Notes: a model not told the origin generated them from the letters alone. DNA of 64,000 nt from IMGVR_UViG_3300023179_000009:310001-374000, one strand, 5' to 3'; counted from the first letter of the stretch, positions 12,196-48,306 are shown. Made by a program: numbers and translations.

Positions 12196-12749
12196 ACAAA
12201 ACTACGTTCCGGGCTACGTTGGTCGAATCGAGCGATAGCGATTTTGAGGACATGGTTGATAGTGCCGGTACTCTGTGCATTAAAAATGATGCTGGTTATT
12301 TCCTTTGTGGCGGAGATTCTATAGAGTTTACGAATCATCGTGCTTCTTTTAATGGCAATACCGTTAAGGTAAAAACCAAGATTGGTAACACTTTTGTTTT
12401 TGAACTCAACAGCAAGCGTGATGTGGATGATGTGCTTCATAATCTGCAAGACGCTGCTGAGATTCTAAAGTTGATGGGATACGATTCTGCCAGCATTTCA
12501 ATTTACAATGTTGTTGAAGAAGTAGCCGAATTGGCTGGAGTATAAAATGTTCAAGAAATGGCGAGTTGATTATGTTGGTTGGGATTTAACGAATCTTTTT
12601 TCTACGGGTTCTAGACTTAATGGCGGCGGCTTTTTGGGCGGTGCTGCGCCCTATAAGTATTGGCGTGTTGGTCCGTTGATGTTCAAGCATTATTGGTAAC
12701 GAATACCAACTAGAGTGAGTGTTCCACTCACTCGTTATAAAGGATTTAT

Positions 12750-13496
12750 ATGCTCACTATCATCGACTCTGTCACGGAAGTCAGTTTGTATTCGGGTGAC
12801 GTTACGGTTGACCTTGGTTTGATTCGTAATTTGACTCATGCCGTTAGTATTTTTGGCGGTTTGAGCAAGCCTGATAAAATGCCGTGTTATTGCTACAATC
12901 TGCCAGCAAGTCGTTGTAAGATGGGCAGCAAACTGAATACGGTTCCGGGCAGTGTTTGCTACGGTTGTTACGCCGCTGACGAACTGTCGTGGGTGAAGCG
13001 TAAGAATGCTGCTAATGGCAAGTGGGCGTTGACTCGTTACACGATGCACACGGTACAGCGGGCATTGCAGCGGCGGTTTGAATCGTTGAGCGATCCGCTT
13101 TGGGTTCCCGCTATGGTTTACGCTATCAATCACTATGCCCGTAAGGGCAGTGATTATTTCCGGTGGCATGATAGTGGCGATATTCAGGACCACAATCATT
13201 TCCAGAATATCATGACTGTGTGCGAGTATACTCCTTCGGTAAAACATTGGTTACCGACTCGGGAGTATGCTATTGTCCGGGGGTTTTGTTATCCTGATAA
13301 TCTGTGCGTGCGGTTGTCTGCCCATATGGTTGATGGCATGCCGCCTGATTTTGATATACCAACTAGCACGGTAAGCACTGGGTCGCCTGTGACCGGCGTC
13401 CGTTGCAATGCTCCTTCGAATGATGGGCGTTGTGGATCGTGCCGCTGGTGTTGGGACCGTAATGTCACGAATGTGGATTATCACCATCACAATTAG
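12750..13496 (+). CDS. GP88-like Cys-rich phage protein
   Basis: YNLPASRC, GSVCYGCYA, YFRWHDSGD, HWLPTRE, C-terminal CGSCRWCW. Confidence 0.7.
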   Translation: MLTIIDSVTEVSLYSGDVTVDLGLIRNLTHAVSIFGGLSKPDKMPCYCYNLPASRCKMGSKLNTVPGSVCYGCYAADELSWVKRKNAANGKWALTRYTMHTVQRALQRRFESLSDPLWVPAMVYAINHYARKGSDYFRWHDSGDIQDHNHFQNIMTVCEYTPSVKHWLPTREYAIVRGFCYPDNLCVRLSAHMVDGMPPDFDIPTSTVSTGSPVTGVRCNAPSNDGRCGSCRWCWDRNVTNVDYHHHN

Positions 13497-13717
13497 GATG
13501 GTTTATGTGGTTGTTTGCCAGTATAGCGGATGATTCCGTTTTTGCCGGGGATTTTACCTTTGTACATAATGTCGATATAGGTAATCAGGTCGGCTGCGAC
13601 TGGGATGCCGTATAATGGTGGGTACTGACCTAGGGCATCGTTAATACTAGGATACAATCCTAGTTTGGCACCTGTCCGGGTGGCATTCTCTTTTAGCAAC
13701 CAGTCTTTAAATTTCAT
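13493..13717 (-). CDS. Small protein with capsid-targeting-like N-terminus, antisense to the array
   Basis: MKFKDWLLKE; CGTAAATA just upstream (13722-13729, minus strand). Confidence 0.7.
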   Translation of the reverse strand: MKFKDWLLKENATRTGAKLGLYPSINDALGQYPPLYGIPVAADLITYIDIMYKGKIPGKNGIIRYTGKQPHKPS

Positions 13718-13758
13718 ATTGTATTTACGATACCAACTACTGTTTCTGGAGGACCATT

Positions 13759-16700
13759 ATGACTGCCAAGGCTTTTTGTGTTGATTATAAAAGTAGCGTG
13801 ATGAATCGTATTGCCGCTGTTGATGCTATTTTGGCGGCTGAGATTGATAGTCAGGCACGTTGCTTGACGTTGGAGCAGGTAGATCGTTTGGAAAAGATTG
13901 ACCGATTTATCCAGGTACTTGTTCGAACGAACAACGGCAGGTTTTTAACGGCTGTTCAAAATGTTCGCTGGTACTGTGGATTGATTGAGAACCATTACCA
14001 GATGGTTAAGGCCGCTATCGGTTCGGAGCCTGCAAGCAAGTACAACACGGATTGGGTTCGAGATATTAGTATTCCAGTGGAGAGGGAGAATGACTGATCG
14101 TAAATTTTATCGCACGGTGATTCACGTTGAAGTGCTGAGTGAAGAGCCGTATACGTTTAGTGGCAATCTCGTGGATGTTGCCAATGATATTAGTTCGGGC
14201 GATTGCAGCGGGGTAGCCCGGACGATTCAGGAAGAAACGTGTGATGGTGCCCGGATGGCACAGTTGCTCGTGGCACAAGGGAGTGATCCTGAATTCTTTA
14301 TGTTGGATGACTCTGGAAACGATACCAACTAGCCTGATATGAATACCAAACAACTTATAGAAGTCCTTGTAAAAATTTGTGTATATGCTCAGGATCATAG
14401 TGGCGACATCTCGGCTTGGGGGCCGAGGAACAGCGACTATCTTCATGAGGCCATGGAACACACGAGTTACGTTGTGGCGTGTTTTCTGGCACAGAATACT
14501 CGTGGCGGGAATGATGGTGTTTCTTTTGACGTTGTGCTTGACAAGCTGGCTGGTCCGGTATTGTCCGAGCGGCAATGGACTCGTGTAATCACTAATCTTG
14601 TCAATGTCTTGGAGGGTAGTCATGAGCGTATTTGATTCAGTTTACGAGCGTTTACAACTTGCGGATAAGATTGCCCATTTGTTTGATTTGGAAGGCGTGC
14701 GGGTGGATGACTTGGAAGAGATTTGTGGTTTTGTCAAGAAAATGGTTGAGAACCATGACAAGGTTACCAAAGTCGCTGAGTCTAAGGCTGTGGAGGCTTT
14801 GTGTGAGTGGTACCGAAACGAAGCGGACATGGACGATATTGCCCGAGAGTACAGTCGTATACTTGGCGTTGGTCCTGTGCAGGTGAAGGGTGAGCAAGCT
14901 GCTGACAGTGACGTTTTTGAAAATGGCGAACGAATTGAATTTGAAGAACAAAACGAATCGGAGGAACAATGACCGCCACTGAAGAGATGGTTAGCGTTGA
15001 GTTTTATCTTTTGGGCGACGATTACACTTGGGACACGGACTTCATTTCGTTTCCTAAAAAGTTGTATGCCCGATACTTGAAGGATAGTAATCCTAGTCCG
15101 ATTTTGGATTGGGTTTACGCTAACGTAAAGTTTCGCAAGAACATTTGTATGGTTGGCATTTATAACGACGAGTCTGTTGACATGGAGGAAGATGATGCCG
15201 AAGTTTAAAGTACACGCTCAACGCACACAGGTGCAGTCTCAAGTGTTTTATGTTACAGCGGCTAGTCGAGAGGAACTTGAGAAGAAACTTCAAGATGTTA
15301 GTTTTGATGAGATGGATAACGTGTTTGATGAAGGGGAAGTAGACTCGATTGATTACGAGGTTATAGAGACTTCTCCTTGTAAAAGTGGCCCGTCTACCTT
15401 TGCTAGCGACGAGTTGCAAGAACAGTTGGATAATGTTTGATACCAACTAGCGACCCAGGAGGTTTCTATGAAAATCATTTCTAACGACTTGTATTGTCAA
15501 ATTGAGCGGTGGGACGATCCGGGCGATTACCCGAATGGCTTGGCTGCGGGTCCGCTGCCGAGTTATTCCTATTGTGAATTTGGTGGCGAGTTTGTTTTTG
15601 AAACTGAAAATGACGAGGAACTGAAAGAACTTGATAATGTTGATGATTGGATTGGCGATTGGGTGAGAGATCAGTGTGATATTGGCGGTCATATTTATCC
15701 TTCGTACCGTTGTGAGGTTGAGGGTAATCGTTGTGTGGTGACGATTACCGAAGCCGAAGTTGAAGAGTACGATCCGGCTGACGATTATTGATACCAACTA
15801 AGAACTTGGAGAAAAACAATGAAGACTTTTAACAAAGACTATAAGGCTCGCAACCAAATCATTTTTGGTGACAACAATACGGATAATTGGCCGGGTGGCG
15901 TTAGGCGAATCGAGTCGCTCAGTCTTAAGCAACTGAATGATTTGATTCAAAATGACTTTATTGATCTTGAAGATTGCCAGAATTGCTCTCCTACTGTCGA
16001 GGCTTTTCTAGACTTCATGAAAAAGTATCCGAAGGTTGAGGCCCACGGTTACGCCGTGAGTCACACCCGAGATGATTATCGTGTAAGTCTTGAAGGTTTG
16101 GCTTTTGCTGGCGATGTGAACAAGCAAATGCTTCTTGATTTTGTACACCTGTGTCGTGATGCTGACGAGTTTGTTGCCGATGATAACGAACTGTACGCTT
16201 GGTGGGACTGATACCAACTAAGGGCGTGGAGGTGCTACATGAATGACTTTAGAACAGATCATCTTTCTGGCGAAGCCTTGAAGATTGCAAGTGCAATTTC
16301 AGAAATGATCAAGAATGATAAGGGTGAAGATCCCCATGGTGGCGGATGTACTGCTTTTTATACACCAGAGCATTGGCGAGAGCGTGGTGAAAAATATGGC
16401 AAAGACAGCGTGTTGATTCTGTGTCACGATGGCGGTGACTTGGCTCTTTATTGCAATCTTGACTATGCCTACTATCGTGGCCAGGAGCGCATCAATAGTT
16501 GTTTGAAGAATCTTGGTTATTATGTTGAGGCTTGTACTTGTTGGTACAGTGCTGTTTATCCTCTTTAATTAATACGAACTAGTAAGTCACTCAATTATTA
16601 GGAGAATAAAAAATGGGAATGGGTAGTTTTGCTTGCGATAGTTACGTCATCAGTTACGACAATCTCAAGAAGTTGTGTCCCAAGGAAGTCGAGGCCATCG

Positions 16701-17522
16701 AGACTGCCAAGTATTGGGAATTTGTTGGCTGGGGTCCGCTTGCCAACGGCATGAGTTACAACGACACCCAGACTATTGGCGAAGGCGTCTTTGATAGCGA
16801 GGAAGAACTGAGTGATGCTCAGGTTGTGAAGGTTTGCAAGGGTTTCGAGAAGTTGGCAAAAGCATTGTGTGCCGCCTTCAAGAAACGTACTGGCGGTCTG
16901 GAGTTGTTTTTCGATCATTATAACGAAGATGAAGGTGATCGGTACGATAGCGTGGAACACAAGGATGGGTGTGTGTTCTGCGTTGGCAATATGGTGCAGT
17001 TGACTCCTGCTGGCAAGAAGTTCCAGAAGGTTGTTGAGAAGCGTCGTTGGGTTCAGTTTGGTTAAAGGGAAAAACATGAACTATCATCGTGAAGAAGAAT
17101 CCCCGGAGCGGGTTAGTTATTACGACGAAAAGTGGAATACTCGTGACGGAGAAATCGTTGAACGTAACGGGTATTTGATACTAGTTAGAGATTCGGAAAC
17201 TGGGCAGGAACTTTGGAAGTGCAATTTTGAAATTGCTTAATCACAAAGGCAAACAATGGAACGTAAACAACTAACTGCTGGTCAGAAGTATCGGGTGATG
17301 AAGGCTGGTGCTTTTCTTCAATACGAGATCCCGCATTACGGTTACTCAGAGTTTCGCTCTGTCAAACTGTCTGAGGGTGATGTGATTGAGTATGTTCGCA
17401 ACGCTTATGGTGGTGGTAGTGACGATGTGAACTACGACTACTTTTTGAGCGGCGACAAGCGAGGCAAGTTCTGGCCCAATAACTGGGGAGTTTGTGACGC
17501 CAGTTATCTTGAGCCTGTCTGA
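13759..17522 (+). other. Array cargo hypothetical CDS (13759-14097, ~14090-14332, 14339-14635, ~14622-14972, 14969-15208, 15192-15440, 15468-15791, 15819-16211, 16239-16568, 16613-17065, ~17076-17240, 17256-17522)
   Basis: ORFs with GGAG/AGGA RBS; most end in or at a motif copy; many are acidic. Confidence 0.75.
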
Positions 17523-17647
17523 TACCAACTAGGGGGCAACTGTTAAGTAACGCTTAACAGTTGCCCCCTAAGTGCTAAAACTGGCACTTATCTCAAATAA
17601 ATCGCTTTTAAGTGACGTTTTTGGCATTTAAGTACAAGGAGAAAATC

Positions 17648-18016
17648 ATGGGACTTGATCAGTACGCATTTGCTCGTCGTGGTGAGCCGGTCGAGAAGGA
17701 CGGTCAACTCGAATATCCCGACAAGGTGGAGCTTGCCTATTGGCGTAAGCACCCGAACCTTCAGGGCTGGATGGAGAATTTGTACCGGGAGAATGGTGGT
17801 ACTGAGGAGTTCAATTGTCAGGAAGTTGAACTGACTCTTGAGGATCTGGATTCTCTCGAAGCGGCCATCACTGGTACGGAACTGCCGGAAACCTGTGGGT
17901 TTTTCTTTGGCGAGAACAGCGATGATTACTACAAGGACAAGGACTTGCAGTTCATCGAGGAGGCCCGTCAGTACATTAATGATGGATACACGGTCGTTTA
18001 CTATAGCTGGTGGTGA
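17648..18016 (+). CDS. Conserved phage hypothetical protein
   Basis: MGLDQYA...YWRKHPNLQGWM...LPETCGFFFG, a pattern I recall from many phage proteins. Confidence 0.7.
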   Translation: MGLDQYAFARRGEPVEKDGQLEYPDKVELAYWRKHPNLQGWMENLYRENGGTEEFNCQEVELTLEDLDSLEAAITGTELPETCGFFFGENSDDYYKDKDLQFIEEARQYINDGYTVVYYSWW

Positions 18017-18209
18017 AAAAACATGGCAATTCATATTGAAGTTTTAAAAGATTTTATTGATGAAGCTTTTCGCTACGACTCAAACTGTAAATTCTGGGTC
18101 GTCGAAGATAATGGATATTTTTTAGTATCCAATCGGGGACATTTGATGGATCTTGGAGAACCATTTGAAGAAAATGGTGATACCAACTAGCACATCAGGA
18201 GGACCAAAC

Positions 18210-19612
18210 ATGAAACTTGGATCTGAAACTGGTAGTCTGATGAATCATGTCATGACTGGTAGCAACCAGCGTGAGCCGAAGGTTGGTGATGGTGCCACGA
18301 TCTGCATGTGGACTGATCGACATGCGGGTACGATCATCAAGGTGACTCGTTGCACGGTTACTGTGCAGGAGGACAAGGCGATCAGGACGGACACGAATGG
18401 CATGAGCGAGTCGCAGACTTACTCATACGAGCCTGATCCGAATGGTGCTACTTATGTGTTCCGTAAGACCAAGAACGGTTGGAAGTCAAAGGGCGTAGGC
18501 TTGCTGATTGGTGTTCGGCGTCACTATTACGACTATAGTTTTTGAGGAAATTATATGATTAAGTCTGCAACACAAGTAAGAGATGAGATGTTGGGTAACG
18601 ACGAGTACATGACATCTTTAGATAATAGTATTCGTCATGTCATGGACCGCATTGAATGGGCGAAGTCTCAGGGGTTTACCCGTATTTGTTTTTGCCCCGA
18701 AACACGCCACGAGGATCAAATCAGGCGAATGTTTTTGGACAAGGGCTACACGTTTAAGCCCACGGGATACAACGGTGGCGTTTGGCAACTGAGCGAAGAT
18801 ATCTGTTGGTGATACCAACTAGGAGAACACTATGGCTACTACCAAGAAAACTAAAAGTCAGCGAATGAAAAATATTGAGCAGGAAATTATTTGGTATAGG
18901 ATTCGCAAACCTATTGCTGAAGCCATGCGTAAGTGTGGCCAACTAGGCTTTGAAGTCTCAGGACATGGTTGTGGTTTTGGCGGTGAAGATTTTAGCCTTT
19001 TGAATAAGCGTAAAGATCTTTATGTGAACTTTTGCGACCGGGGAAACAGTTGCAAGGTGACTGTTAGCACTTGTGATACCACCAATGATGATGGTTATCC
19101 CATCGAGTTGATCAGCGGGACTATTGGCAAAGCCATGAAGTTTATTGAAGGACGATAATGAAACCACTACTTCAATACGACCGATACAGTAGCAGTGCCG
19201 AGTACGCAGACTACATTTATCACTTTGCAATTGGCGAAGATGGGCTTGGTGGTTTTCTCCGGGTTACTCTTAACAATGAACCCGTACAAAAGCCTTCTGC
19301 CACTCTCGACATCTGCATCAATAATGAAAGTGGCGACGAGTTGATCGAGCAGAGTTTTGAAATTGACCGAAAAGTTGCTCGTGACATGCTGGCAGTTCAT
19401 TACCCCAAACAGGAAGTTATCCAGTGATAGTTTATTCTATTGTTTATTATGATGGCGGAGTTGCAGGTTATTGTTTGCACAAGACCTACAAGAATCTTGC
19501 CGATGCTGAAAAAGAACTTGAAAAAATTGATCAATTAATTGATGACGGAGAATTTGGAAGCGACGTTAAAAGCGCTGGTGTTATCGAAATAAACTGCGCT
19601 GCTGCTGAGTGA
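18210..19612 (+). other. Array cargo hypothetical CDS (18210-18545, 18555-18812, 18832-19158, 19158-19427, 19424-19612)
   Basis: RBS and motif punctuation. Confidence 0.75.
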
Positions 19613-19738
19613 TGGTAATTTAGGGCAAAAAATTGGAAGAATAGATAGAATTTTTCACAATTTTTGCTCTTTACAAATTTCTTTTTTTGTGAATAATGTG
19701 TTTGTTCAATGGAATGGTTCCGTTGAGTTTGTTACCCC

Positions 19739-20044
19739 ATGGAGGTAGTTATGAAGAGTTTTGTTTTTGCTGCTCTTGCAGTTGTTTCGTTTTCGGCTTT
19801 TGTTAATGCCGGTGAGGAAAAGAGTGTTTTGGTCAACACTCCCACCCCGGTTGCAGCCCTGACCGTAGTAGCCGCTCCGGTAGAAACCGTTGTTGTTGCT
19901 TCGGATTGCAAGAATGGCCGCTGCTGTGCCAACGGTCGTTGTTGGCTCACTCCACGGTACGAGAGAACCGTTGCTGTTGAACGCACCTGCACCGATTGTG
20001 AGCAGTCGTACAAGCGGACAGTGACTCGTACTCGTCGTCGTTGA
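19739..20044 (+). CDS. Small secreted Cys/Arg-rich protein
   Basis: Signal peptide MKSFVFAALAVVSFSAFVNA; CKNGRCCANGRC; Arg-rich tail. Confidence 0.65.
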   Translation: MEVVMKSFVFAALAVVSFSAFVNAGEEKSVLVNTPTPVAALTVVAAPVETVVVASDCKNGRCCANGRCWLTPRYERTVAVERTCTDCEQSYKRTVTRTRRR

Positions 20045-20089
20045 TCTTGTCAGATTCCTCAAATTCCTCCTTTCGTTTGAGGGACAATG

Positions 20090-20132
20090 CAGGGGTGTGT
20101 GAGATGCGCTTCTCACACACCCCTGTTTTTTT
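20090..20132 (+). terminator. Intrinsic terminator
   Basis: CAGGGGTGTGTGAGA-N6-TCTCACACACCCCTG followed by T7. Confidence 0.8.
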
Positions 20133-20161
20133 AATACCAACTAGAAAACTACCGATTTTTC

Positions 20162-21157: not shown

Positions 21158-21190
21158 AATAATCTATTTATACAAAGATTTTTAAATTAT

Positions 21191-21382: not shown

Positions 21383-21387
21383 TTTTT

Positions 21388-24335: not shown

Positions 24336-24368
24336 TTAGTTGATACCAACTAAGGACACAGTTTTATT

Positions 24369-38449: not shown

Positions 38450-38510
38450 TACCAACTAGGGGAGTGTGAGAAAAACAAATCTCACACTCCCCTAGTTTGG
38501 AGGAAACAAC

Positions 38511-38990: not shown

Positions 38991-39035
38991 TAGCGTGTAG
39001 TCACTGTGGCTACAACACAACCCAAAGAGGAAATC

Positions 39036-39473: not shown

Positions 39474-39535
39474 TACAAACTAGGGGAGTGTAGGAAACAC
39501 CTACACTCCCCTAGTCTTTTTCTGAAAGGACCACA

Positions 39536-40356
39536 ATGATCATCCTCGATACCGACCTGAGCAACGCTCCGGGTTGCGTTTGCAAGATTCTGAACGAGCG
39601 GGAAACTCGGAGTATCCTAGTCCAAACCGACTATGATGCTCCGGGCGTGGCCCGCACGTTCGGCTGGGATATGACCGAAGTCCAGCCGCAGAACTACGGT
39701 TACTACGGGTTGAAGTGTCATCACCGTGGCACCGATGGCACGATTGACTGCCCCGATTGTGGCGTCAAGGCTGGCACGTTCATTGCAGCCGCCATCGAGT
39801 TTATCGACTCGAATGACGGTGCAACGGCGGAAGATCCGGGGTACTTCGAGTAATACCAACTAGCAGGGTGTGGGAAAAACCTACACCCTGCTAGTCCCTC
39901 TAACAGAAAGGTCGATCATGCGAACGATTCAAGATCTGGCAAAGGAAGCCCTCCAGGTTCAGGACGCCTGCAATCTTTCCGGTGTGGTTCACGGTTTCAG
40001 CCGTGCGATCACCGAGTTGCGGGAAATCCTCCGAACAACCGGCGGAGACCTGTCAACCGATGCGGTAAATACGCATCCCATCTGCAAGATGTGGGCAAGC
40101 AAGATCCACGATTTGACACGAATGGGATTTGGTGACGCTGATAGTTTCAGTGACGCCTTCTACCAGTGTTCAAATCTCTCTGAGGGAAAGACTGCCGCTT
40201 GATACCAACTAGGGGGGAGGTAACACTCCCCCCTAGTTCTTTTTCACGGAGGAAAAGATGTTTCGACGGATTGTAGGACAACTTGCCGATTGGCATTTTT
40301 TGGTTGAAGTTCTTGTTGGTTTCACAATCATGTGGTTCGTTTTGTTGATGTTGTGA
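39536..40356 (+). other. Array cargo CDS (39536-39853, ~39918-40202, 40258-40356 32-aa hydrophobic peptide)
   Basis: Motif-hairpin-RBS-ATG architecture. Confidence 0.7.
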
Positions 40357-40401
40357 TACCAACTAGGTGGATGTTCCAACCACAACCCCGGAGAACTCAC
40401 A

Positions 40402-40950
40402 ATGAGTTACACCGCAGCCCCTGCCTGTCAGTTGTTGGCAACACATTGTTGTTGCTGTGGTCGTCCGCTGGTCGATAGTGTTAGTGTCGAACTGGGCATC
40501 GGCCCGGAATGTCGCAAAGGCGATACTGGTGGTATCGACGCTGCCACCCAGGATGATTGCAACCGGCTTACTCGTTCCGCTGCTGTTGCCGCTCAGAGTG
40601 GTAACGTGGAGCGTGTTCGAGAGATTGCCGAAACAATCGAATCGCTCGGTCTTTCGGAACTGGCAAACAAGATTCGCAAGCGTTTCGTAAACGCCGAAAA
40701 GCGATGCAAAATCACCATCGTTGACAATGGTGATATGCTTATCGTTGAAACTCCTTTCCGTAGGAAAGATTCGAGTGGCTTCATCGAAGCGTGGCGAAAC
40801 ATTCCCGGCAGGCGGTATGACCGCAACCGTAACGCCAACGTGGTTCCTGTGAATCAGAAGCGCCAGTTATGGCAACTTCTGCAACGGTTCTTCCCCGGAG
40901 AGTTTGGCAAAGGGCCACAGGGAATATTCAGAATCCCTGAGGCTGCTTGA
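40402..40950 (+). CDS. DUF6011-like Zn-finger protein
   Basis: CCCCGRPLVDSVSVELGIGPEC. Confidence 0.6.
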   Translation: MSYTAAPACQLLATHCCCCGRPLVDSVSVELGIGPECRKGDTGGIDAATQDDCNRLTRSAAVAAQSGNVERVREIAETIESLGLSELANKIRKRFVNAEKRCKITIVDNGDMLIVETPFRRKDSSGFIEAWRNIPGRRYDRNRNANVVPVNQKRQLWQLLQRFFPGEFGKGPQGIFRIPEAA

Positions 40951-41001
40951 TACCAACTAGGTGAGCGTGAGGGTTGTTCCTCACGCTCACCTAGTCCTTT
41001 T

Positions 41002-41603
41002 ATGAAAGGGTTTATCGTGGCAACCAAAGTCAAAGTCACAAATCGAATCAAGCGGCAGATCCAGGCCGAGGCTCTCCGGGCATTGCACGACCGGGGACAC
41101 TTCACCGCCGCCGAGCGGCACGCCGGAATCGAGGCTGACCGCTGCATGTGTGGCGGTTTCGTGTGGGGCACGAATCTGCTCTGCAACGAGTGTGTGATGG
41201 AACTCGCCCGCAAGCAAAAGTAATACCAACTAGGGGAGTGTAGGAATCACCTACACTCCCCTAGTCTTTCAAAGAAAGGTTGACCATGCGAAAGATCGAA
41301 AAGAAAATGATCGAGGCGATTCAGAATCGCAAGGACATGAGCCTCAACAACACCGTGGTCAAGCACGGTACAGCCACCAGCGTTGTGTTTCTCCACAATC
41401 ATCCCATTTGCATTTTCATGTGGGCTGATAATGCGGTGGCTGTCAGCAATTGTGGCTGGTCAACGAACACCACCAAAAGCCGCCTGAATGCGGTTTTGGG
41501 TTCGTTTTGTGATACGGGGATTCACCAGCACAAGCATGTCTGGTACATGGGCAAGGAAGAGTTCCGCAACGGAACTCGTGTCCCGATGAAGCAGATCGCC
41601 TGA
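41002..41603 (+). other. Array cargo CDS (41002-41223; 41280-41603)
   Basis: Motif-hairpin-RBS architecture. Confidence 0.75.
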
Positions 41604-41667
41604 TACCAACTAGGGGAGTGTAGGAATCACCTACACTCCCCTAGTTCTTTTTCCAGAAAGGGAAAAC

Positions 41668-42129
41668 ATGAAACTCATCCTGATGCGTGGCGTGAGCGGC
41701 AGCGGCAAAAGCACGCTGGCCGAAAAGATTTGCAGCGAACAGGAATTTGCTGTAATTGTTTCAACCGATCACTATTTCATGGTCGATGGTGAATACCGAT
41801 TCGACCCGAAGCGTCTCGGTGAGTATCACTCCGCTAACGTGAACCGAACCGAACAGTTCATGGTTGAACGGTGTGCGTGTATCATCGTGGACAACACGAA
41901 CACACAAGCGTGGGAAATGAAACCCTACGTCGAGTTGGCCATGAAGCACGGCTACGCTATCGAAATCCATCAGCCCGATCCGGTCAGTTTCGAGGAACTG
42001 ATGCAGCGGCAGGCAAACCGGGCCGACAGCAACAAGGCTCTGCCCGCCGAAGTGGTAAAGCGGATGCTCGACCGATTCGAGCACGATGTGACAGTGGCAA
42101 AGATTCTCCAATCGAAGCGACCCTTCTGA
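41668..42129 (+). CDS. P-loop kinase, AAA_33 / polynucleotide-kinase (N4BP2-like) family
   Basis: LILMRGVSGSGKSTLA, VSTDHYF, IIVDNTN...EMKPY. Confidence 0.82.
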   Translation: MKLILMRGVSGSGKSTLAEKICSEQEFAVIVSTDHYFMVDGEYRFDPKRLGEYHSANVNRTEQFMVERCACIIVDNTNTQAWEMKPYVELAMKHGYAIEIHQPDPVSFEELMQRQANRADSNKALPAEVVKRMLDRFEHDVTVAKILQSKRPF

Positions 42130-42186
42130 TACCAACTAGAAGGAGTGTGATAAGCACTCCCCCTAGTTCTTTTTCCAGAAAGGAAC

Positions 42187-43286
42187 ATGATGGATCACGA
42201 ACAGGCCATGCGGAATGCCATGAAGCGTGTGATGACGTTCATGGATAGCCTCTCGCCGGGGAACAGTCCCCGTGCCACAACAACTGACAGCCCGATGATT
42301 CACTTCAATGGCTGGAATCGGTGGTGTGTCAAGTTCGACACACACAGCGGTAAAAACTATCACGCATTTGGTTCTACGCTCGTCGAAGCGTTCAATCGGT
42401 TGGTCGATGAACCAACCGTGTCTGATACCAACTAGACCAGTGTTCCCTTCCCCTCTTCAAAGGAGTCTGCCATGCAGATCAATTTCCTCGGTGAGAACTA
42501 CAACGTCGAGCCGGTTGCCATGCGATACACAGACGGCAATCTGGCAATTCAAGTTCTGCGTGCCGATGGGCCTTTCGGTATGCTCTCGACCAATGTCGAG
42601 GGTGTGCAACTCGCCCCGAACGAGTTCTGCGTGAAAACGTGGAGCGAGAACGATCCGTGGGCATTGGATCTTATCCGCCAGTGTCCGCAGTTCGAGAACA
42701 CTGGACGCACGTTCCGTAGCGGGTTCGTCAGCGGCCCGATCTACCGGATGGTTGGTTGATACCAACTAGATCGATACCGAACTACGGCCCTCGTCGTTCA
42801 AGACAGAAAGGACGCTGTAGTGTCATGCCAAAGCGGTGGCCACCGCACGGCAATCGTTGCCAAAGTACACGGCAACGATCAGCACACTACGGAAATGCGG
42901 GTGCGATACCCGCCGGGGTCAGCATACACTGTAGGCCAAAAGCCGAACAACGAGGCGTCTATCCCACGCCTACAACCCCGAAAGGGGAGAGAGTGTATGG
43001 GGTCTAATACCAACTAGGGGGACATGGGGAGACAACCCATGTCCCCCTAGTTCTTTTATGAAAGGCAAACATGGTTCCACGAGAAATGTATCGGTGGGAA
43101 TATTTCCATGCGATGGGCAACAACTGCCGATTGCATGGAATGTCATCTCACGATGCCCAAACCGTGATCGATAAGGCCGCTGGTTTCGGCAACGATTTCG
43201 AAAACTTCTGGACAGGATTTCTGTACGGCAGAAGTGATCAAATCGCTTCTTTGCCAAGCAAAGATTCCGTGGTCTGGGTTTTTTAG
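42187..43286 (+). other. Array cargo CDS (42187-42435; 42472-42759 DUF4313-like; 43071-43286)
   Basis: 42472 has LAIQ...PFGMLSTN...FCVKTWSEN. Confidence 0.65.
42770..43005 (+). ncRNA. Candidate structured non-coding RNA cassette
   Basis: No RBS-supported ORF; many nested stems (see findings). Confidence 0.5.
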
Positions 43287-43385
43287 TCTGTCACATTTCG
43301 ACAGGCCGTGCGTAATACCAACTAGAACGGTATCGAGAATGGCTCTCGACGCCCACAACCCTCCTGTCCAGAAAGGACAACTGTC

Positions 43386-43700
43386 ATGAAGTTCATCCTC
43401 AATGCGTTTTCTCTAAACATGATCGGCACATTTCCGGCGACCATCACGGTCGAGGAAGTCTCGACCCACGAAGCCTGTGTCGAGGCTCACGGTGTCACCA
43501 GTGGCGTCGGCCACCCCGATACGGCGGCGGTGTTCGCTTCGATTCTCGGTACGCCCGTTCCGATGAATCGTGCAACCGTCAGTCTCGTGTCTGGTGATCG
43601 TGTGCTGGTGGGCCAATACAGTGGCCCTCGTCTGCCCGAGGGTGCAACTACGCTGCCCGAGGGTGCCACGATCAAGTGGCTCGTCGTCTCTGTCAACTGA
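43386..43700 (+). CDS. acrIII-1: DUF1874 / AcrIII-1 cyclic-oligoadenylate ring nuclease homologue (anti-CRISPR type III)
   Basis: ILNAFSLNMI...SGVGHPDTA...PMNR...LVGQYSGPRLPEG: GH, NR and RLPEG signature of the STIV B116/SIRV1 gp29 family. Confidence 0.8.
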   Translation: MKFILNAFSLNMIGTFPATITVEEVSTHEACVEAHGVTSGVGHPDTAAVFASILGTPVPMNRATVSLVSGDRVLVGQYSGPRLPEGATTLPEGATIKWLVVSVN

Positions 43701-43771
43701 TACCAACTAGCAGGGTGTGGTGATGAGCCACACCCTGCTAGTCCTTCAACCCCCAACCCTGAAAGGCAATC

Positions 43772-44149
43772 ATGCCCTACACCGCTTGCGTCCTCGAAGA
43801 GTCATCCCGCACCACGCTCGTGGAGTGGATGTATTCCAATCACGAAGTGCCCGAGCACTTCGAAATCGTCGGCCACCACTGCACCGTCGATCTGAAGCCC
43901 ATCGCCAAAAGCATGGGCTGCGATCTGGATGGCCAGCGACACGAAATGCGTGTCGTTCGTTTCGGTCGTCTCGACGGCATCATGGCTGTCGAAGTCGAGA
44001 CGGTTGTTCCCAGCAAGAACGACCGCAAGCACATCACCTTGTGCTACGACAAGCCGAATGGCTGGAAACCGAAGCAGTCGAACGACATCGTGGAATGGAC
44101 TGACATCGAACCGTTCGTTCTGCACGGTGTCGTGAAGGAATGTGCGTGA
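43772..44149 (+). CDS. 2H phosphoesterase (RNA-repair type)
   Basis: Two HxT-like motifs: HHCTV and HITL. Confidence 0.7.
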   Translation: MPYTACVLEESSRTTLVEWMYSNHEVPEHFEIVGHHCTVDLKPIAKSMGCDLDGQRHEMRVVRFGRLDGIMAVEVETVVPSKNDRKHITLCYDKPNGWKPKQSNDIVEWTDIEPFVLHGVVKECA

Positions 44150-44212
44150 TACCAACTAGGGGGATGTGATGAAAGTCACATCCCACCTTTCCTTTTCACA
44201 AAAAGGCCGATC

Positions 44213-45325
44213 ATGAACACTGATTTTCAAATGATGGTCGAGGCGCAGGTGGGTGACAAAACGGTCACCGTTTATTGCGAAACCCATGCAGAAGCGTGGG
44301 CTGCGGAAAATGCCATCCGCAACATGGCACGACAGTTCGGCTTGCAAGTGGGCACGGTGACAATCACCGTCAACGACACACCACGGTGGCGAGTCGATAC
44401 AATCTGGCTCAATCCTCCATACAGTGTTGTGCAGGATCAGTGATACCAACTAGGGGGGTGTGAACAACACCCCCCTCTTCTCTTGAAAGGAGAACGACGA
44501 TGGAAAACGAAGGCCAGATGCGAAGTAGGACATGCACGTTCGTCAACAGAACGTACATGTTCGAACACATCGAAGAGGCACTGATGTTTGCTCCTCCGGA
44601 GCAGACGATCAGCATCGAGATTCTGCCAGATGGACGCTACAGTGTTACCGAAACGTGGCGGGATGCGGAGCCTGCCGACCGCAGACGGTTCGCCAGCATC
44701 TGCAATCGTGGCGGTAACTGATACCAACTAGGGGGACACGGGGAACAACCGTGTCCCCCTAGTTCCGTTTTCCCTCAAACCAGAGAGGCCATCATGACGA
44801 TCAAAGTTCAGATTCCGGGCCGAGTCACAGCCTCTGCCCTTGTCGAGTCCGGACTCGACGCTTCTAGCAACGGAGTGCTGACATTCCACGCTTTCAGCGA
44901 CGCCATGAAAGCGAGGGTGTTGGAACTGATTGCCGCAGGGCAACACGTGGTGGTCAAGGCCACCACCGAAGTGCCCCGAACCGGCGATTGGTTCGAGCCA
45001 GCACAGTGATACCAACTAGGTGGACACGAGGACACAACTCGTGTCCCCCTAGTTTCGTTTCTCCTAACCCCGGAGTTTTTCCATGAACGATACAATCAAA
45101 TGGCGAAACTTGCCCGCCCGCATGACCCCGAAGGTCGATCCCTCGTTCGATGAACTGTGTCGTGCGATGAAGAATCGTACACAGATCACGGTCATCGGAG
45201 CATGGGGCCATCCCATCACTGGCCTCGTCAACAAAATCGAGGCAGAGGGTGGTAGCGGTCGATGCTGGAACGTGACGATCAGTCACGGCATCCACACCAG
45301 CACGATCTTCGTCCGCACGGCGTGA
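44213..45325 (+). other. Array cargo CDS (44213-44443, 44500-44721, 44794-45009, 45083-45325)
   Basis: Each ends exactly on the TGA of a motif copy. Confidence 0.78.
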
Positions 45326-45393
45326 TACCAACTAGGGGGACACAGGACACAAGCCTGTGTCCCCCTAGGTTCGTTTCCACCCCGGAGGATCAC

Positions 45394-45945
45394 ATGATCC
45401 ACATCGCTAGTTTCGTTCGGCGTCAAACCGCCGACAGTCGGTTCAGCCACTGGACGCTGGACGACAATGCTCTCGTCCAAAGGATCGAAGCCGGTCTGCC
45501 CAATGCCAAACCCGGATACCGGGATGGCGTGGTGCTCGTGCCGGTCGATCCCGATGGCTTCTTCAGTGCCACGGTCACGCTGACCAACGGCCAAAAGCTG
45601 GTGGGCGAGTTCGCCAGCCGTCGCACCGGCGAAGAGCCTCGTAAGAGTCTCGCCGCCATCGGCCAGAAGCAGCCCGCCGGTACGGTGTGGGTCGTGCTCT
45701 ACGCCCACCACGTTCTCGCTGAGAAAAACGAGAACGAGACCGATGCCGACTGGGAAGTGGTCAGCGTCAACGCCAGCCCGAGCGTGGACGCTGAACCGGC
45801 TCCCATGCCGCCGGAAACGCTGATCGCCAACCACTTCGAGTTGGATGGCGGGACGGCGACGAAGATGAGCGACAGTGACTTCGTCGCATCGCTCAAGGCC
45901 AGCGTCCTCTACTGGAAGGACAAGGCACAGGTTCAGCCTGAGTGA
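45394..45945 (+). CDS. DUF3228-like protein
   Basis: FVRRQT, KPGYRDGVVLVPV, RRTGEEP, VVLYAHHVLAE, DWEVVSVNA, PM.PET, GGT. Confidence 0.7.
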   Translation: MIHIASFVRRQTADSRFSHWTLDDNALVQRIEAGLPNAKPGYRDGVVLVPVDPDGFFSATVTLTNGQKLVGEFASRRTGEEPRKSLAAIGQKQPAGTVWVVLYAHHVLAEKNENETDADWEVVSVNASPSVDAEPAPMPPETLIANHFELDGGTATKMSDSDFVASLKASVLYWKDKAQVQPE

Positions 45946-45979
45946 TACCAACTAGAACAGTGTCGAGGGGGATGGCAAC

Positions 45980-47405
45980 GTGCTGTCCCCCTCGACGGTT
46001 CGATTCCTTCAGGAGAACAAAATGGAGTTGCACATCTACCAGCTCGGGGGTCTCGACAACGACTCCCTGATCGGCATCGCTCACGACACGCACACGATGC
46101 GGTCGCTGATCGAACTGGCCGAACGCCGGGGTGCCACGGGCGTGAGCCTGCACGGCACCGTCCCGCACTTGCGGGAGAGCGTGAGCGGTGAGTTCACGCT
46201 GGACGAGGCCAAGCGGGAATACAACAGGGCCGTCGATGCGGTCAACGCCGTCATCATGGACGGCATCGACCCGGCGTTCGGGATGCAGCCCTGATACCAA
46301 CTAGGGGACTACAGGAACGGCCTGTAGTCCCCTAGTTGCGTTCCTGCCCCGGAGACTTCGCCATGATTTCTGAAGGGCCGAACGATCTTTTCATTGAAGA
46401 CGGCGAAAGCCTGTCCTCGATCATCGAACGGATCGGCAAGAAGTGGCCCGGTGCCACACTCGATCATTGCAAGATCGAGCACAACGACTGGTTCGAAAAA
46501 ATGATCGTGAAGTTGGTATCGCCTCAGTGATACCAACTAGGGGGACACGAGGACACAACTCGTGTCCCCCTAGGCTCGTTTTCCTCAACAACAGGAGCCT
46601 TCCCCATGAAGGTGCAAAAGAAAGTTTTCCGTTTCCACGCCAAGCGTGGGCAGCAGGATATGGTGATCGAACTGCTGCGGCAGTATGGTCAACCGTGGAC
46701 GACCACGAGCGCCGAGGGCATTCGTGTGTTCGTCGAGTTGCCCGAGGGCGTCAGCAAGCGGAGCGTCGATAAGATGCTGCGTGATGCTGGTGTGCCGGGT
46801 GCGGCATCATGCCGTAACGTCCCCATCGTGGACGTTGGATATGATGCCGGAAGGATGGAGCCTGCCCTTGAACGGCTCTATCGAGCCGGATACTTGAACC
46901 GAAAGGTCAAGATCTCGTGGGGCGGCACACGGGTCACCATCGGCTATCTTCGGGCAGAAGATTACTGCGACGGGCCGGGATTCGGCTTGTACGTAGACCC
47001 CGACAAAAAGATGAACGGCTACCAACTGCCGACATCGGCAGTTCAAGGAACACCGGGACAGAAACTGCCGTGGTGTTGATACCAACTAGGGGGACACAGG
47101 ACACAAGCCTGTGTCCCCCTAGGTTCGTTTCCCCTCCAACAAGAAAGATTCTTCACATGAAGAACTTCCTCAAGCTGCTCCTCTGCTCTGTTCTGGTCGG
47201 ATCGTGCTTCGCCGCCATCATCTGCGGCTACGTGATGGTCGGAACGGCCATGGGGTATTTCCACCCCAACTACGTTCCCGAAGCGGGTGAAACGCTTCTC
47301 GGTTTCTACGTCACGCTGTACACATGCAGCGTGGCCCCATTCCCGTTGCTGGTGCTGCTCATCAGTACCAGTACGGCCGTTGCGAGTGTGTTCGAGCATC
47401 GGTGA
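45980..47405 (+). other. Array cargo CDS (45980-46294, ~46363-46530, 46606-47079, 47157-47405 membrane protein)
   Basis: Each ends on a motif TGA. Confidence 0.75.
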
Positions 47406-47415
47406 TACCAACTAG

Positions 47416-47601
47416 AACACCACACGAGTGAACACCGTCTACGGCTGGTCATCCTCACCCCCTGCTTGCAGGCGTAGAGGGTGCCAAACCGGAAGCGTGG
47501 GCCGACATGCGGGTTCGATCCCCGTAGTCGTTTCCTGTCTGGTGCGGATCATAGGGGCTGATCGTAAATGCTCCGCCAGCCGTAGACGGCTTCACCTTGT
47601 T
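47416..47601 (+). ncRNA. Candidate structured RNA with a tRNA-like T arm
   Basis: 14-bp terminal stem 47435-47448/47576-47589; GCGGG-TTCGATC-CCCGT at 47509-47525. Confidence 0.5.
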
Positions 47602-47681
47602 AATACCAACTAGGTTGGTGTCGAGTGAGTCACAACGTGTGACACACTGACGTTCGGTAGGTTTCTTTCAGGAGGATCGCC

Positions 47682-48056
47682 ATGAGCAAGCCCAAGGTCA
47701 AGTCCGAGCCCGTCGCCCGCACCGCCAAGCCCAAGTCGGCCAAGCAGTTGGCCAAGCGGGCGGCGAACATCGCTGCCTGGGAAGCCCGCAACGCCGCCCT
47801 TCGGAACGGCACCTTCAAGGGCGTGGTCGAAAAGGCCGCTGAGGCGAAGGCCCGACACGTGGCCGAGCGGATGGCCGAGACGGAGAAGGCCCGCACGATG
47901 GTGGTGACCCACATGAGCCACCCGGTCTACGGCCAACGGCTCAGCCGTTTCCTCAACGGCAGCAAGGCCGACCCGAGGTTGCTGGCCAACGTGGTGATCC
48001 CCAACTGGATCAAGACGCAGGGTATCGTCGTCGATCACGTGCGACCCACCACGTGA
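47682..48056 (+). CDS. Basic Ala/Lys-rich hypothetical protein
   Basis: AGGAGG RBS, MSKPKVK start, high-GC codons. Confidence 0.75.
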   Translation: MSKPKVKSEPVARTAKPKSAKQLAKRAANIAAWEARNAALRNGTFKGVVEKAAEAKARHVAERMAETEKARTMVVTHMSHPVYGQRLSRFLNGSKADPRLLANVVIPNWIKTQGIVVDHVRPTT

Positions 48057-48306
48057 TCTGATACCAACTAGGGGGGTGTGAGTGATGCAAGTCGCTCACA
48101 CCCCCCAGCGGGTTGACGGCCCGCCATCCTGTCCCCGTCTCGACCCCTGAGTCATCCACACTCATACGCTTCGAGTGACTCAAGTCGGGGGATGGGATAA
48201 CTGGCCGTCGCCAGTCTTCCACCTAGTGATACCAACTAGGGTGGTGTCGAGTGAGTCACAACGTGTGACACACCGACGTTCGGTAGGTTTCTTTGGGAGT
48301 CATGCC

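What the first reader, a model, noticed from the sequence alone, without database searches (positions are those of the whole stretch)
12702..48245. Second conserved box: the site is bipartite, ...AACTAG-N4-GTGT
Seen: many copies carry GTGT (or ATGT/CTGT/GCGT) 4 nt, occasionally 5, after the TAG. This holds with and without a hairpin: 27208 GGTG-GTGT, 35642 GTGG-GTGT, 37453 ATCG-GTGT, 38979 TAGC-GTGT, 39852 CAGG-GTGT, 41222 GGGA-GTGT, 42424 ACCA-GTGT, 45944 AACA-GTGT, 47602 GTTG-GTGT, 48228 GGTG-GTGT. Fixed spacing with a free spacer suggests a protein reading a ~21-bp bipartite site, not just a stop-codon or structure constraint.
Basis: seen in the sequence. Interest (0 to 1): 0.7.

Follow-up and report, generated by a model that had tools for sequence, protein, structure and literature searches.

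The report
Start-site box of a phage cassette promoter
The "second box" is real, but it is a loose pyrimidine-purine step exactly 7 bases after a 13-base motif repeated about 119 times between the small genes of a 459-kb freshwater phage. This is the geometry of a bacterial transcription start site, so the motif is most likely a phage-specific promoter that also serves as the seam where gene cassettes are shuffled.

Summary
The window lies in a 458,813-bp freshwater phage record. The motif T-R-ATACCAACTA-G occurs 119 times (at most 1 mismatch), always on the + strand. All copies fall in one 93-kb run of mostly single-gene cassettes.

All ten cited GTGT copies are correct, and GTGT four bases after TAG is strongly enriched: 19 of 119, against at most 4 at any other offset. 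However, GTGT is only the spelling used by the hairpin-rich, GC-rich end of the array. After collapsing look-alike copies it falls to 2 of 37.

What survives is a pyrimidine-purine step at motif positions 17-18: 29 of 37 collapsed copies against a 23% background (P = 2e-12). CA, TA, CG and TG are used about equally. The step is present with or without a hairpin, and also in related arrays from other lakes.

The step sits 7 bp after the last motif base, follows a purine-rich spacer, and reads YRY or YRR. That matches the start-site rule for bacterial RNA polymerase. Ribosome-binding tracts pile up exactly at position 18. The motif also precedes tRNA genes. The phage encodes three sigma-like proteins, two of them without a detectable region 4.

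My reading is a -35-less phage promoter set into the 5' arm of the upstream gene's terminator hairpin. No RNA data exist to test this. Other lake populations show whole-cassette gain, loss and reordering at these modules.

The parts
7317..48804 (+). The part of the motif array inside the window, from the first exact T-G-ATACCAACTAG copy to the last. The array starts about 44.6 kb upstream of the window, at genome position 265,397. Copy density, motif exactness, hairpin frequency and GC content all rise toward 48.8 kb.
   Evidence: GC3 rises from 0.31 to 0.64
37452..37472 (+). Model copy without a hairpin: 13-nt motif (37452-37464), free spacer ATCG (37465-37468), box GTGT (37469-37472). Y17-R18 is T37470-G37471. 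A pyrimidine-rich leader, a ribosome-binding site and ATG at 37505 follow.
25088..25123 (+). Model copy of the short-leader class: motif, a 5-nt spacer, then C-G at positions 17-18. The purine of that step is the first base of the ribosome-binding tract GAAAGGAG, and the start codon GTG lies at 25121.
   Evidence: about 22 copies have their ribosome-binding tract starting exactly at position 18-20
41601..41656 (+). Model copy with a hairpin: motif 41601-41613, and a 17-bp stem 41608-41646 whose 5' arm begins with the motif's AACTAG and contains the GTGT box. A T-rich tail follows (terminator-like).
24341..24442 (+). A motif copy (ending TAA) whose last base lies 15 nt before tRNA-Lys, with C-A at positions 17-18. 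A second case is the motif at 33740-33752 before tRNA-Glu at 33774. Here the motif is used where no stop codon or ribosome-binding site is involved.
43313..43710 (+). One cassette bounded by two motif copies (43313-43325 and 43698-43710). Contigs from two other freshwater runs lack exactly these 385 bp, and the 11 motif bases are shared at the joint.
   Evidence: joint 43314->43700, both = 11, side 83 in X5
37716..39516 (+). Two hairpin modules (37716-37754 and 39478-39516). In another lake population they are fused inside their 3' arms, which places cassette 37722-38202 after cassette 38991-39483.
   Evidence: X7 contig of 1147 nt, joint 39507->37746, 8 shared letters, side 255
48792..48804 (+). 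Last motif copy. The array and the GC-rich DNA end here. A relative from another metagenome (L140) ends its array at the corresponding place.

Best explanation
The second box is the transcription start element (Y at -1, R at +1, usually Y at +2) of a compact phage-specific promoter that has no -35 element. The recognition element of that promoter is the conserved block R-ATACCAACTA-G.

If the G of TAG is taken as position -7, the free N5 spacer becomes the discriminator, which is purine- and G-rich. Y17-R18 then falls at -1/+1, exactly 7 bp downstream.

GTGT is only the spelling of this step in the hairpin families. There the promoter is embedded in the 5' arm of the upstream gene's terminator hairpin. 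Transcripts arriving from upstream contain the whole hairpin and stop. Transcripts started at position 18 lack most of the 5' arm and read on into the next gene.

Because the module is repeated between nearly all the genes, it also provides the homology at which cassettes are lost, gained and reordered.

Shown here: the positional signal, its independence from hairpins and from family structure, the geometry, the cassette joints, and the presence of sigma genes. Inferred: that transcription starts there, which sigma reads the motif, and that the hairpins terminate transcription.
For: 1. Geometry. Y-R is centred at position 18 in 88 of 119 copies (YRY 57, YRR 31). No other centre exceeds 23 for YRY. 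That is 7 bp after the last conserved base. Bacterial RNA polymerase prefers to start 7 bp downstream of the -10 element, with a non-template purine at +1 and a pyrimidine at -1. GGG-type (purine-rich) discriminators favour position 7 (PMC5730371). A Y-1/R+1/Y+2 'start' element, with YRR second, is reported across Bacteria (bioRxiv 10.1101/2025.01.23.634641).
2. The spacer is purine-rich: position 12 is a purine in 97 of 119 copies. It is free to vary between orthologous junctions while Y-R is kept.
3. Class conservation. The four Y-R dinucleotides are used about equally in unrelated copies.
4. In copies with short leaders the ribosome-binding tract starts exactly at position 18-20, only once a base earlier (the copy at -23478, position 17). 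Start codons pile up at positions 29-35.
5. The motif precedes tRNA-Lys and tRNA-Glu by 15-21 nt.
6. All 119 copies point the same way as the genes.
7. Nearly every gene at 28-48 kb is followed by a strong hairpin. Terminator-like sites number 42 against 20.7 expected, many of them these hairpins. Sigma-70-type promoters are not enriched, 21 against 16.6. Downstream genes therefore need another way to be transcribed.
8. The genome encodes three sigma-70-family proteins. Two have region 2 but no detectable region 4, which fits a promoter without a -35 box. One of them is itself a cassette at the head of the array. No upstream conservation exists out to -50.
9. Hairpins fold slightly better on the + strand, 44 against 19, with 84 G-U pairs. 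This fits an RNA-level role.
10. An unrelated 485-kb phage record (LR745208.1) shows the same layout: a promoter-like motif (a sigma-28-type consensus, judged from memory), then T-G 7-8 nt later, then the ribosome-binding site.
Against: No transcript data exist. No listed RNA run holds the region, so no start site is mapped.

The motif does not resemble any known -10 consensus beyond an A at the -11 position. The -7 position is G, not T.

The region that would have to melt is G-rich in the hairpin copies.

The motif is far more uniform (11 near-invariant bases) than most promoters. Its first bases double as the upstream stop codon in 39 of 57 cassettes. A pure promoter does not require that.

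Between 15 orthologous junction pairs with a close relative, positions 17-18 are not clearly more identical (70%) than their neighbours (63-71%). Y-R is kept in both members in only 9 of the 15.
Confidence: 0.5

Rival explanations
1. The motif plus box is the binding and cleavage site of an unrecognised site-specific recombinase or nuclease that moves the cassettes, in the manner of an integron. The flexible Y-R step marks the kink or cut position.
For: Whole cassettes are missing or reordered in other lake populations, with the joint inside the module. Related arrays carry other cassettes behind the same motif. The motif supplies stop codons in two frames, and 47 of 57 cassettes end their ORF in it. 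Y-R steps are the most deformable DNA steps (general knowledge).
Against: Six-frame Pfam searches found no tyrosine recombinase, serine recombinase, Y1 transposase or reverse transcriptase. The joints lie at different places: within the 11-14 motif bases in two cases, and in the 3' arm of the hairpin in another. That is the pattern of homology-driven exchange, and a RecA/UvsX-like gene is present. About half the copies have no hairpin. The box carries too little information to be a half-site.
Confidence: 0.15
2. There is no second functional element. The signal is a by-product of common descent of the intergenic modules together with two unrelated local constraints: the inner stem of the hairpin families (GTGT/ACAC), and a ribosome-binding tract placed at a minimal distance (C-GAAAGG, C-AGGAGG).
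For: The literal GTGT disappears on collapsing (2 of 37) and is confined to the hairpin-rich end. About 22 copies owe their purine at position 18 to the ribosome-binding tract. Conservation between orthologues is weak.
Against: Copies with neither a hairpin nor an adjacent ribosome-binding site still show Y-R, about 17 of 21 by my own hand tally of the listing. Singletons at 55% identity show 29 of 37 with all four Y-R dinucleotides. The adjacent offsets are depleted, 7 and 12 of 119. Descent would conserve letters, not a purine/pyrimidine class.
Confidence: 0.15
3. The element acts in RNA. The array is transcribed as long RNAs, and the motif, spacer and Y-R mark an endonuclease processing site. 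The hairpins then protect the new ends, as at the RNase III sites between T7 early genes.
For: Hairpins fold somewhat better on the + strand and use G-U pairs. The modules sit between every gene, in the sense orientation. Stems of 13-19 bp are longer than typical terminators.
Against: The Y-R step is kept where there is no hairpin. Many hairpins carry T-rich tails like terminators. No Rfam family matches. A nuclease would still leave the source of transcription unexplained, given only chance-level sigma-70-type promoters.
Confidence: 0.1
4. The 13-nt motif is a stoperator-like operator: an asymmetric repressor site repeated in one orientation at gene ends, which blocks elongating polymerase. 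The Y-R step is a bend point beside it.
For: It is 13 nt, asymmetric, single-orientation, intergenic, overlaps stop codons and has many copies. This is the same anatomy as Cluster A mycobacteriophage stoperators (PMC9283540, abstract only; site details from my own knowledge). Some cassette genes belong to families common in actinophages.
Against: Stoperators have no second box and no hairpin. No repressor was identified. Silencing would not explain the fixed distance to ribosome-binding tracts or the position in front of tRNA genes. The phage shows no integrase.
Confidence: 0.07

Closest known systems
PeSLs (promoter-early stem-loops) of T4-type phages (Arbiol 2010; Comeau 2014, PMC4122927)
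   Same: A small composite promoter/terminator module is repeated between the small accessory genes of a hyperplastic region, followed by a ribosome-binding site and a start codon. Insertions, deletions and swaps between related phages have their ends in these modules (searches compared).
   Different: PeSL promoters are ordinary sigma-70-type -35/-10 pairs with the stem-loop upstream of them. Here there is no -35. The conserved block is an unfamiliar 12-13-mer that overlaps the upstream stop codon. The stem-loop starts inside the block, so the presumed start site lies in its 5' arm. The scale is also different: 119 copies over 93 kb, with a GC gradient from 33% to 59%.
Bacterial core promoter: -10 element, discriminator and 'start' element (PMC5730371; bioRxiv 10.1101/2025.01.23.634641)
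   Same: A conserved block, then 6 free purine-rich bases, then Y-R-Y or Y-R-R with the purine 7 bp after the block. An A sits at the position equivalent to -11.
   Different: The block is not TATAAT-like (AACTAG in the hexamer position). It extends 6-7 bases further upstream and has no -35 partner. This points to a phage sigma rather than the host's primary sigma. No start site has been mapped.
Stoperators of Cluster A mycobacteriophages (PMC9283540)
   Same: A 13-bp asymmetric site in one orientation relative to transcription, with many copies in short intergenic gaps next to stop and start codons.
   Different: Those are repressor sites of temperate phages, with roughly 20-35 copies and no hairpin or second box. 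No repressor or lysogeny genes were seen here.
Integron attC sites and cassette arrays
   Same: A one-directional array of mostly single-ORF, promoterless-looking cassettes separated by a repeated site that often forms a hairpin. Cassette content varies between relatives.
   Different: There is no integrase. About half the sites have no hairpin. The flanks do not fit RYYYAAC/GTTRRRY. The joints are not at one fixed point.

Membership tests
Sigma-dependent bacterial promoter with start element | Y(-1) R(+1) (Y or R at +2) placed 7-8 bp downstream of the last base of the -10-like element | tested here: met
   YRY 57 plus YRR 31 of 119 are centred on position 18, which is 7 bp after G11. No other centre exceeds 23 for YRY. 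Singletons give 29 of 37, P = 2e-12.
Sigma-dependent bacterial promoter with start element | Recognisable -10 hexamer (TATAAT-like, A at -11 and T at -7) and a -35 element or extended -10 TG | tested here: not met
   The hexamer position reads AACTAG, so A at -11 is present but -7 is G. There is no conservation from -50 to -2. The sigma-70 consensus scan is not enriched. This is compatible only with a non-standard (phage) sigma.
Sigma-dependent bacterial promoter with start element | Primary transcript 5' ends at the predicted +1 | not testable with these tools
   No listed RNA run holds the region.
Sigma-dependent bacterial promoter with start element | A cognate sigma factor is available | tested here: inconclusive
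   There are three sigma-70-family genes, two without a detectable region 4. Which one, if any, reads the motif is unknown. The protein-DNA job was not folded.
PeSL (T4-type promoter-early stem-loop) | Composite of a promoter and a stem-loop in intergenic gaps of a hyperplastic region | tested here: inconclusive
   The stem-loops and the intergenic position are shown. The promoter function is inferred only.
PeSL (T4-type promoter-early stem-loop) | Sigma-70-like -35/-10 promoter with the stem-loop just upstream of it | tested here: not met
   There is no -35/-10 pair. The stem-loop begins within the conserved block and extends downstream.
PeSL (T4-type promoter-early stem-loop) | Indels and swaps between related phages end in the modules | tested here: met
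   Joints 43314->43700 (11 shared bases), 45321->45942 (14 shared) and 39507->37746 (8 shared, in the hairpin). Cassette order is shuffled in L127.
Integron attC / cassette array | An integron integrase (tyrosine recombinase) next to the array | tested here: not met
   PF00589 gave no match in six frames of the whole 459-kb record, although the control genomes all matched.
Integron attC / cassette array | Every site is an imperfect palindrome with RYYYAAC ... GTTRRRY cores | tested here: not met
   By one count only 58 of 119 sites have a stem of 7 or more pairs, and many fewer have strong stems at 0-27 kb. The left core reads TACCAAC and the right reads GTT followed by pyrimidines.
Stoperator (Cluster A mycobacteriophage) | A 13-14-bp asymmetric site in one orientation relative to transcription, with many intergenic copies | tested here: met
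   119 copies, all on the + strand.
Stoperator (Cluster A mycobacteriophage) | Bound by the phage immunity repressor, which halts elongation | not testable with these tools
   No repressor was identified and there are no binding data.
Intrinsic terminator (for the hairpin copies) | GC-rich stem-loop followed by a T run on the sense strand | tested here: inconclusive
   About 13 motif-linked hairpins at 30-49.5 kb pass the stem-plus-T-tail scan, which found 42 sites in total against 20.7 in shuffles. Tails in the GC-richest copies are interrupted (for example GTTCGTTTCC). Stems of 13-19 bp are unusually long.

The most novel reading that the evidence does not exclude
The array could be a directional gene-capture system of a huge phage, with no known integrase. 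In this reading the 13-mer plus the Y-R step is the target of an unrecognised recombination activity. The steady rise of GC3 from 0.31 to 0.64 toward one end would be a chronological record: foreign GC-rich cassettes enter near the distal end and slowly drift toward the phage's own 33% GC, while their motifs and hairpins erode.
Probability: 0.12. Interest if true: 0.9.

Novelty: new variant of a known kind. Interest (0 to 1): 0.58.

Why it matters
If the reading is right, one short sequence explains how about a hundred accessory genes of a huge phage are each switched on. It would act as a self-contained promoter-in-terminator unit read by a phage sigma. It would also explain why these genes come and go so easily between lake populations.

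It gives a concrete, testable promoter for an uncultured 459-kb phage. It also extends the 'regulatory cassettes drive modular shuffling' idea from T4-type phages to a much larger and more regular system.

The GC gradient along the array is unexplained. It may make the tempo of gene gain and amelioration in a virus directly measurable.

Tried and rejected
1. Searching IMG/VR for the 14-mer gave only single chance matches. The 465-kb and other contigs among them carry the 10-mer at control frequency. A two-motif pattern in IMG/VR found only coding repeats.
2. The 492-aa protein next to the array's end has no relatives in IMG/VR. Its only Pfam matches fall below the curated cut-offs.
3. RNA evidence: two run searches listed no RNA run that holds the region. 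Both read-laying runs were therefore spent on DNA variation.
It is no evidence either way.
5. Two 142-aa ORFs on the minus strand in the last cassettes were checked as possible small transposases. They are unrelated to each other and match no family, so they are probably chance ORFs in GC-rich DNA.
6. A k-mer screen for other promoter-like repeats outside the array found only a compositional or coding word (TTGGCAAAA) with no consistent context.
7. Donor analysis of cassettes by tblastn was uninformative, with one Myxococcus phage hit and one query with no match.
8. Reading the motif as an extended -10 (TG-n-TACCAA), as a -35 box or as an ECF-type AAC/CGT pair was rejected. In each case the Y-R step or the absence of a partner element falls at the wrong distance.
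9. Rfam has no family for the module.

Full report
WHERE THE WINDOW LIES. The window is bases 310,001-374,000 of a single 458,813-bp contig that IMG/VR holds as a virus record. The record is linear, CheckV rates it 91% complete, GC is about 33%, and it has no rRNA. Near-identical DNA is present in contigs from many freshwater runs of 2011-2025. The region is therefore not an assembly artefact.

THE PRIMARY MOTIF. AACTAG occurs 103 times in the window against 21 expected. It is the end of a longer block, T-(G/A)-ATACCAACTA-G.
- The 11-mer ATACCAACTAG occurs 83 times in the genome, and never on the minus strand.
- With at most 1 mismatch to ATACCAACTA there are 119 copies. All are on the + strand, and all lie between genome positions 265 kb and 359 kb.
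- No base is conserved upstream of the block out to -50.
- Toward the distal end (window 48.8 kb) several things rise together: spacing shortens from about 2,500 to about 355 bp, exact 13-mers rise from 4 of 10 to 30 of 31, strong hairpins from 1 of 10 to 25 of 31, and GC from 0.37 to 0.55, peaking at 0.59.
- GC3 of the + strand ORFs rises from 0.31 to 0.64, and the genes are almost all unrelated to each other.

CASSETTE STRUCTURE. At 27-49 kb, 47 of 57 inter-motif units hold one ORF that fills most of the unit and stops inside the next motif. Of these, 39 stop at the T-R-A and 8 at the TAG. In relatives where the ORF ends at TAG, the first T is replaced (AGATACC, CGATACC, CAATACC). The recognised block is therefore R-ATACCAACTA-G, and the T belongs to the stop codon. 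The cassette products are ordinary phage accessory proteins: an AAA_33 kinase, a HAD phosphatase, DUF6011, and PHROG families of unknown function.

CHECKING THE OBSERVATION.
- All ten cited copies are correct.
- GTGT sits at this offset in 19 of 119 copies, against at most 4 at any other offset.
- All 19 lie at 27-49 kb, where one large family of related hairpins dominates.
- Collapsing similar downstream sequences leaves 6.0 of 69 and 4 of 59 singletons. With relatives added and a stricter collapse it leaves 2 of 37.
- The logo shows what is really constrained: position 17 is C or T in 92 of 119 copies, and position 18 is G or A in 105 of 119.
- Y17-R18 holds in 88 of 119, about 50 of 69 collapsed, and 42 of 59 singletons, against about 13 of 59 at control offsets. 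The neighbouring offsets are depleted.
- In the 23 copies at 12-27 kb, which have two hairpins and no GTGT, it holds in 18.
- In the strict singleton set it holds in 29 of 37 against a 23% background (P = 2e-12), spelled CA 9, TA 8, CG 6, TG 6. R-Y-R-Y holds in 13 of 37 against 4%.

There is a second element at fixed spacing after a free spacer, and it is independent of the hairpin. But it is a purine/pyrimidine pattern, not GTGT.

RELATIVES. A two-motif pattern scan of metagenome contigs returned 39 loci. Seven of them are true arrays from other samples: L125, L127, L130, L134, L135, L140 and L151. The rest come from the source contig itself or are unrelated, mostly coding, repeats.
- These arrays carry the same 13-mer, but cassettes that are partly different or differently ordered.
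- Five junctions are orthologous among L125, L130, L134, L135 and L151. They keep the 11-mer invariant and change the N4 spacer freely. In all 23 sequences they keep a pyrimidine at 17 and a purine at 18: TCAT/TCAG, GTGT, CTGT/TTGT, GCAT/ACGT/GCGT, ACAC/ACAT.
- A 177-kb contig (G005) whose array-head sigma gene is 95% identical has 24 forward and 0 reverse copies. It is collinear with the older part of our array at 65-88% identity.
- In 15 orthologous junction pairs with G005, the motif is 95% identical, the spacer 63%, positions 17-18 70% and the following 12 bases 71%. Y-R is kept in both members in 9 pairs, in one member in 3, and in neither in 3. Letter-level conservation of the box is thus weak. 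This fits a class preference rather than base-specific contacts.

WHAT THE BOX MOST LIKELY IS. Bacterial RNA polymerase prefers to start 7 bp downstream of the -10 element. It prefers a non-template purine at +1 and a pyrimidine at -1. A GGG discriminator gives the modal position 7 and purine-rich discriminators favour upstream starts (PMC5730371). A recent survey names Y-1/R+1/Y+2 the 'start' element, with YRR second. It reports co-localisation with the start site when the element is centred 7 or 8 bp after the -10 element (bioRxiv 10.1101/2025.01.23.634641).

Here YRY (57) and YRR (31) are centred on position 18, which is 7 bp after G11. No other centre exceeds 23. The spacer is purine-rich.

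Four further observations fit a start site.
- In copies with short leaders the purine-rich ribosome-binding tract begins exactly at position 18-20, only once a base earlier (the copy at -23478, position 17). Start codons cluster at 29-35. It looks as if the shortest permitted messenger begins with its Shine-Dalgarno sequence.
- The motif stands 15 and 21 nt in front of tRNA-Lys and tRNA-Glu, where translation signals are irrelevant.
- Strong hairpins, many with T-rich tails, follow most genes at 28-48 kb: 42 terminator-like sites against 20.7 in shuffles. Sigma-70-type promoters are at chance level, 21 against 16.6. Each gene therefore needs some other entry point for polymerase, and the motif is the only conserved candidate.
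- The phage has no detectable RNA polymerase of its own (PF00940 and PF00623), although the PF00940 search also matched none of the control genomes. It does encode three sigma-70-family proteins: 297 aa with regions 2 and 4; 285 aa with only region 2 detected, and itself a cassette at the head of the array that ends in a motif copy; and 178 aa with region 2 only. A sigma without region 4 suits a promoter without a -35 box. T4 gp55 and its TATAAATA late promoters are the textbook precedent (my own knowledge).

HOW THE HAIRPIN COPIES FIT. The stem begins at the motif's own AACTAG and ends with CTAGTT. Stems are 13-19 bp, with folding energies of about -25 to -38 kcal/mol.
- Position 18 lies 3-6 bases before the end of the 5' arm.
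- A transcript coming from upstream contains the whole hairpin plus the T-rich tail.
- A transcript begun at position 18 lacks most of the 5' arm and cannot form the terminator.
- This would let one module end one gene and start the next. It is an inference.
- The + strand folds better than its complement in 44 of 77 hairpins against 19, and there are 84 G-U pairs. This mildly favours an RNA-level role.

THE MODULE AS A RECOMBINATION SEAM. Contigs from other lakes were laid on 40.0-46.0 kb and 34.0-40.0 kb.
- Some cassettes are missing exactly. One contig skips 385 bp (43314->43700) with the 11 motif bases shared at the joint, on a contig extending 83 nt on its shorter side. Others skip 620 bp (45321->45942, 14 shared), 526 bp and 860 bp.
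- Some are reordered. A 1,147-nt contig joins 39507 to 37746 inside the 3' arms of two hairpins, with 8 shared bases.
- Loose ends show the hairpin at 36395 continuing into the cassette that sits at 29.3 kb in our genome.
- The joints fall at different points of the shared module.
- No tyrosine recombinase, serine recombinase, Y1 transposase or reverse transcriptase is detectable.
- A RecA/UvsX-like gene is present.

This is the pattern described for PeSLs of T4-type phages, where conserved promoter/terminator modules serve as points of exchange (PMC4122927). It is not the pattern of an integron. Short Logan contigs can break at repeats, so I rely only on joints whose shared stretch is shorter than the assembler's word and whose sides are long.

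COMPARISON WITH KNOWN SYSTEMS. It works like a PeSL, as a regulatory module that is also a seam. It fails two PeSL features: there is no sigma-70 -35/-10 pair, and the stem-loop lies downstream of and overlapping the conserved block rather than upstream. It shares its anatomy with stoperators, but those have no second box, and no repressor is known here. It fails the integron tests: no integrase, half the sites without hairpins, and cores that do not fit. I file it as a new variant of the promoter/terminator cassette idea, carrying a non-standard promoter.

WEAK POINTS.
- No start site is mapped, because no listed RNA run holds the region.
- The block resembles no known -10 consensus beyond an A at -11.
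- The DNA that would have to melt is G-rich in the hairpin copies.
- Overlap with the stop codon in 39 of 57 cassettes, and near-invariance of 11 bases, go beyond what a promoter needs.
- The GC gradient is unexplained. The last cassettes are shared with relative L140, which argues against strictly terminal insertion on short time scales.

VERDICT. The word GTGT is a family trait. The best explanation is the start element of a phage-specific promoter (confidence about 0.5). Rivals are a recombinase or nuclease site (0.15), a by-product of descent and local constraints (0.15), an RNA processing signal (0.1) and a stoperator-like operator (0.07).

Noticed in passing
window 1-48804 (genome 265-359 kb): GC content climbs steadily along the array, from about 36% to 59%. 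GC3 goes from 0.31 to 0.64 and GC1 from 0.44 to 0.60. It then drops to 33% within about 100 bp after the last motif copy. The genes are almost all unrelated to one another. This may be a record of gene gain and amelioration, or of biased repair at a recombination hot spot.
   Followed up: partly
L121 (LR745208.1, bases 1-21916): An unrelated 485-kb uncultured phage record has its own per-gene motif: TAAA, 15 bases, then GCCGATAGGG. That is the sigma-28/FliA-type consensus (judged from memory). T-G follows 7-8 nt later, and then the ribosome-binding site and ATG. There are 10 forward copies in 22 kb of 57% GC DNA.
   Followed up: partly
window 8868-9123 (+), with ORFs 8449-9015 and 9989-10774: A group I intron (Rfam RF00028, 70 bits) overlaps the end of an HNH endonuclease ORF. 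A second HNH ORF lies 1 kb downstream. These look like homing elements inside the array.
   Followed up: no
window 33419-33446 (+): A perfect sigma-70 consensus promoter (TTGACA, 16 bases, TATAAT; 12 of 12) lies 24 nt after the motif copy at 33390 and upstream of ORF 33469-33741. It is the only such site in 30-49.5 kb.
   Followed up: no
window 9843-9918, 10783-10857, 24255-24335, 24369-24442, 33774-33846: Five tRNA genes (Leu-CAA, Ile-TAT, Asn-GTT, Lys-TTT, Glu-TTC) sit inside the array as cassettes. Three of them follow a motif copy (Leu about 84 nt downstream, Lys 15 nt, Glu 21 nt).
   Followed up: partly
window 47608-47660 and 48234-48286; also L140 at 733, 924 and 1385: The last cassettes carry a different, repeated structured element: GTGTCGAGTGAGTCACAACGTGTGACACAC, then GACGTTCGGTAGG. 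They have no convincing + strand ORF ending in the motif. Related copies occur at the array's end in a relative.
   Followed up: no
window 36804-37193 (+): This cassette gene matches phrog_24642 (E = 6.5e-42). It shows 70-85% nucleotide identity over 70-140 nt to genes of unknown function in Mycobacterium and Gordonia phages. That is unusually close for a 33% GC phage.
   Followed up: no
genome 266,969-267,826 (44 kb upstream of the window): One of the three sigma-like genes is itself a cassette of the array. A motif copy lies about 540 nt upstream, and the gene's stop codon is the TGA of the next copy. If this sigma reads the motif, it would drive its own expression.
   Followed up: partly
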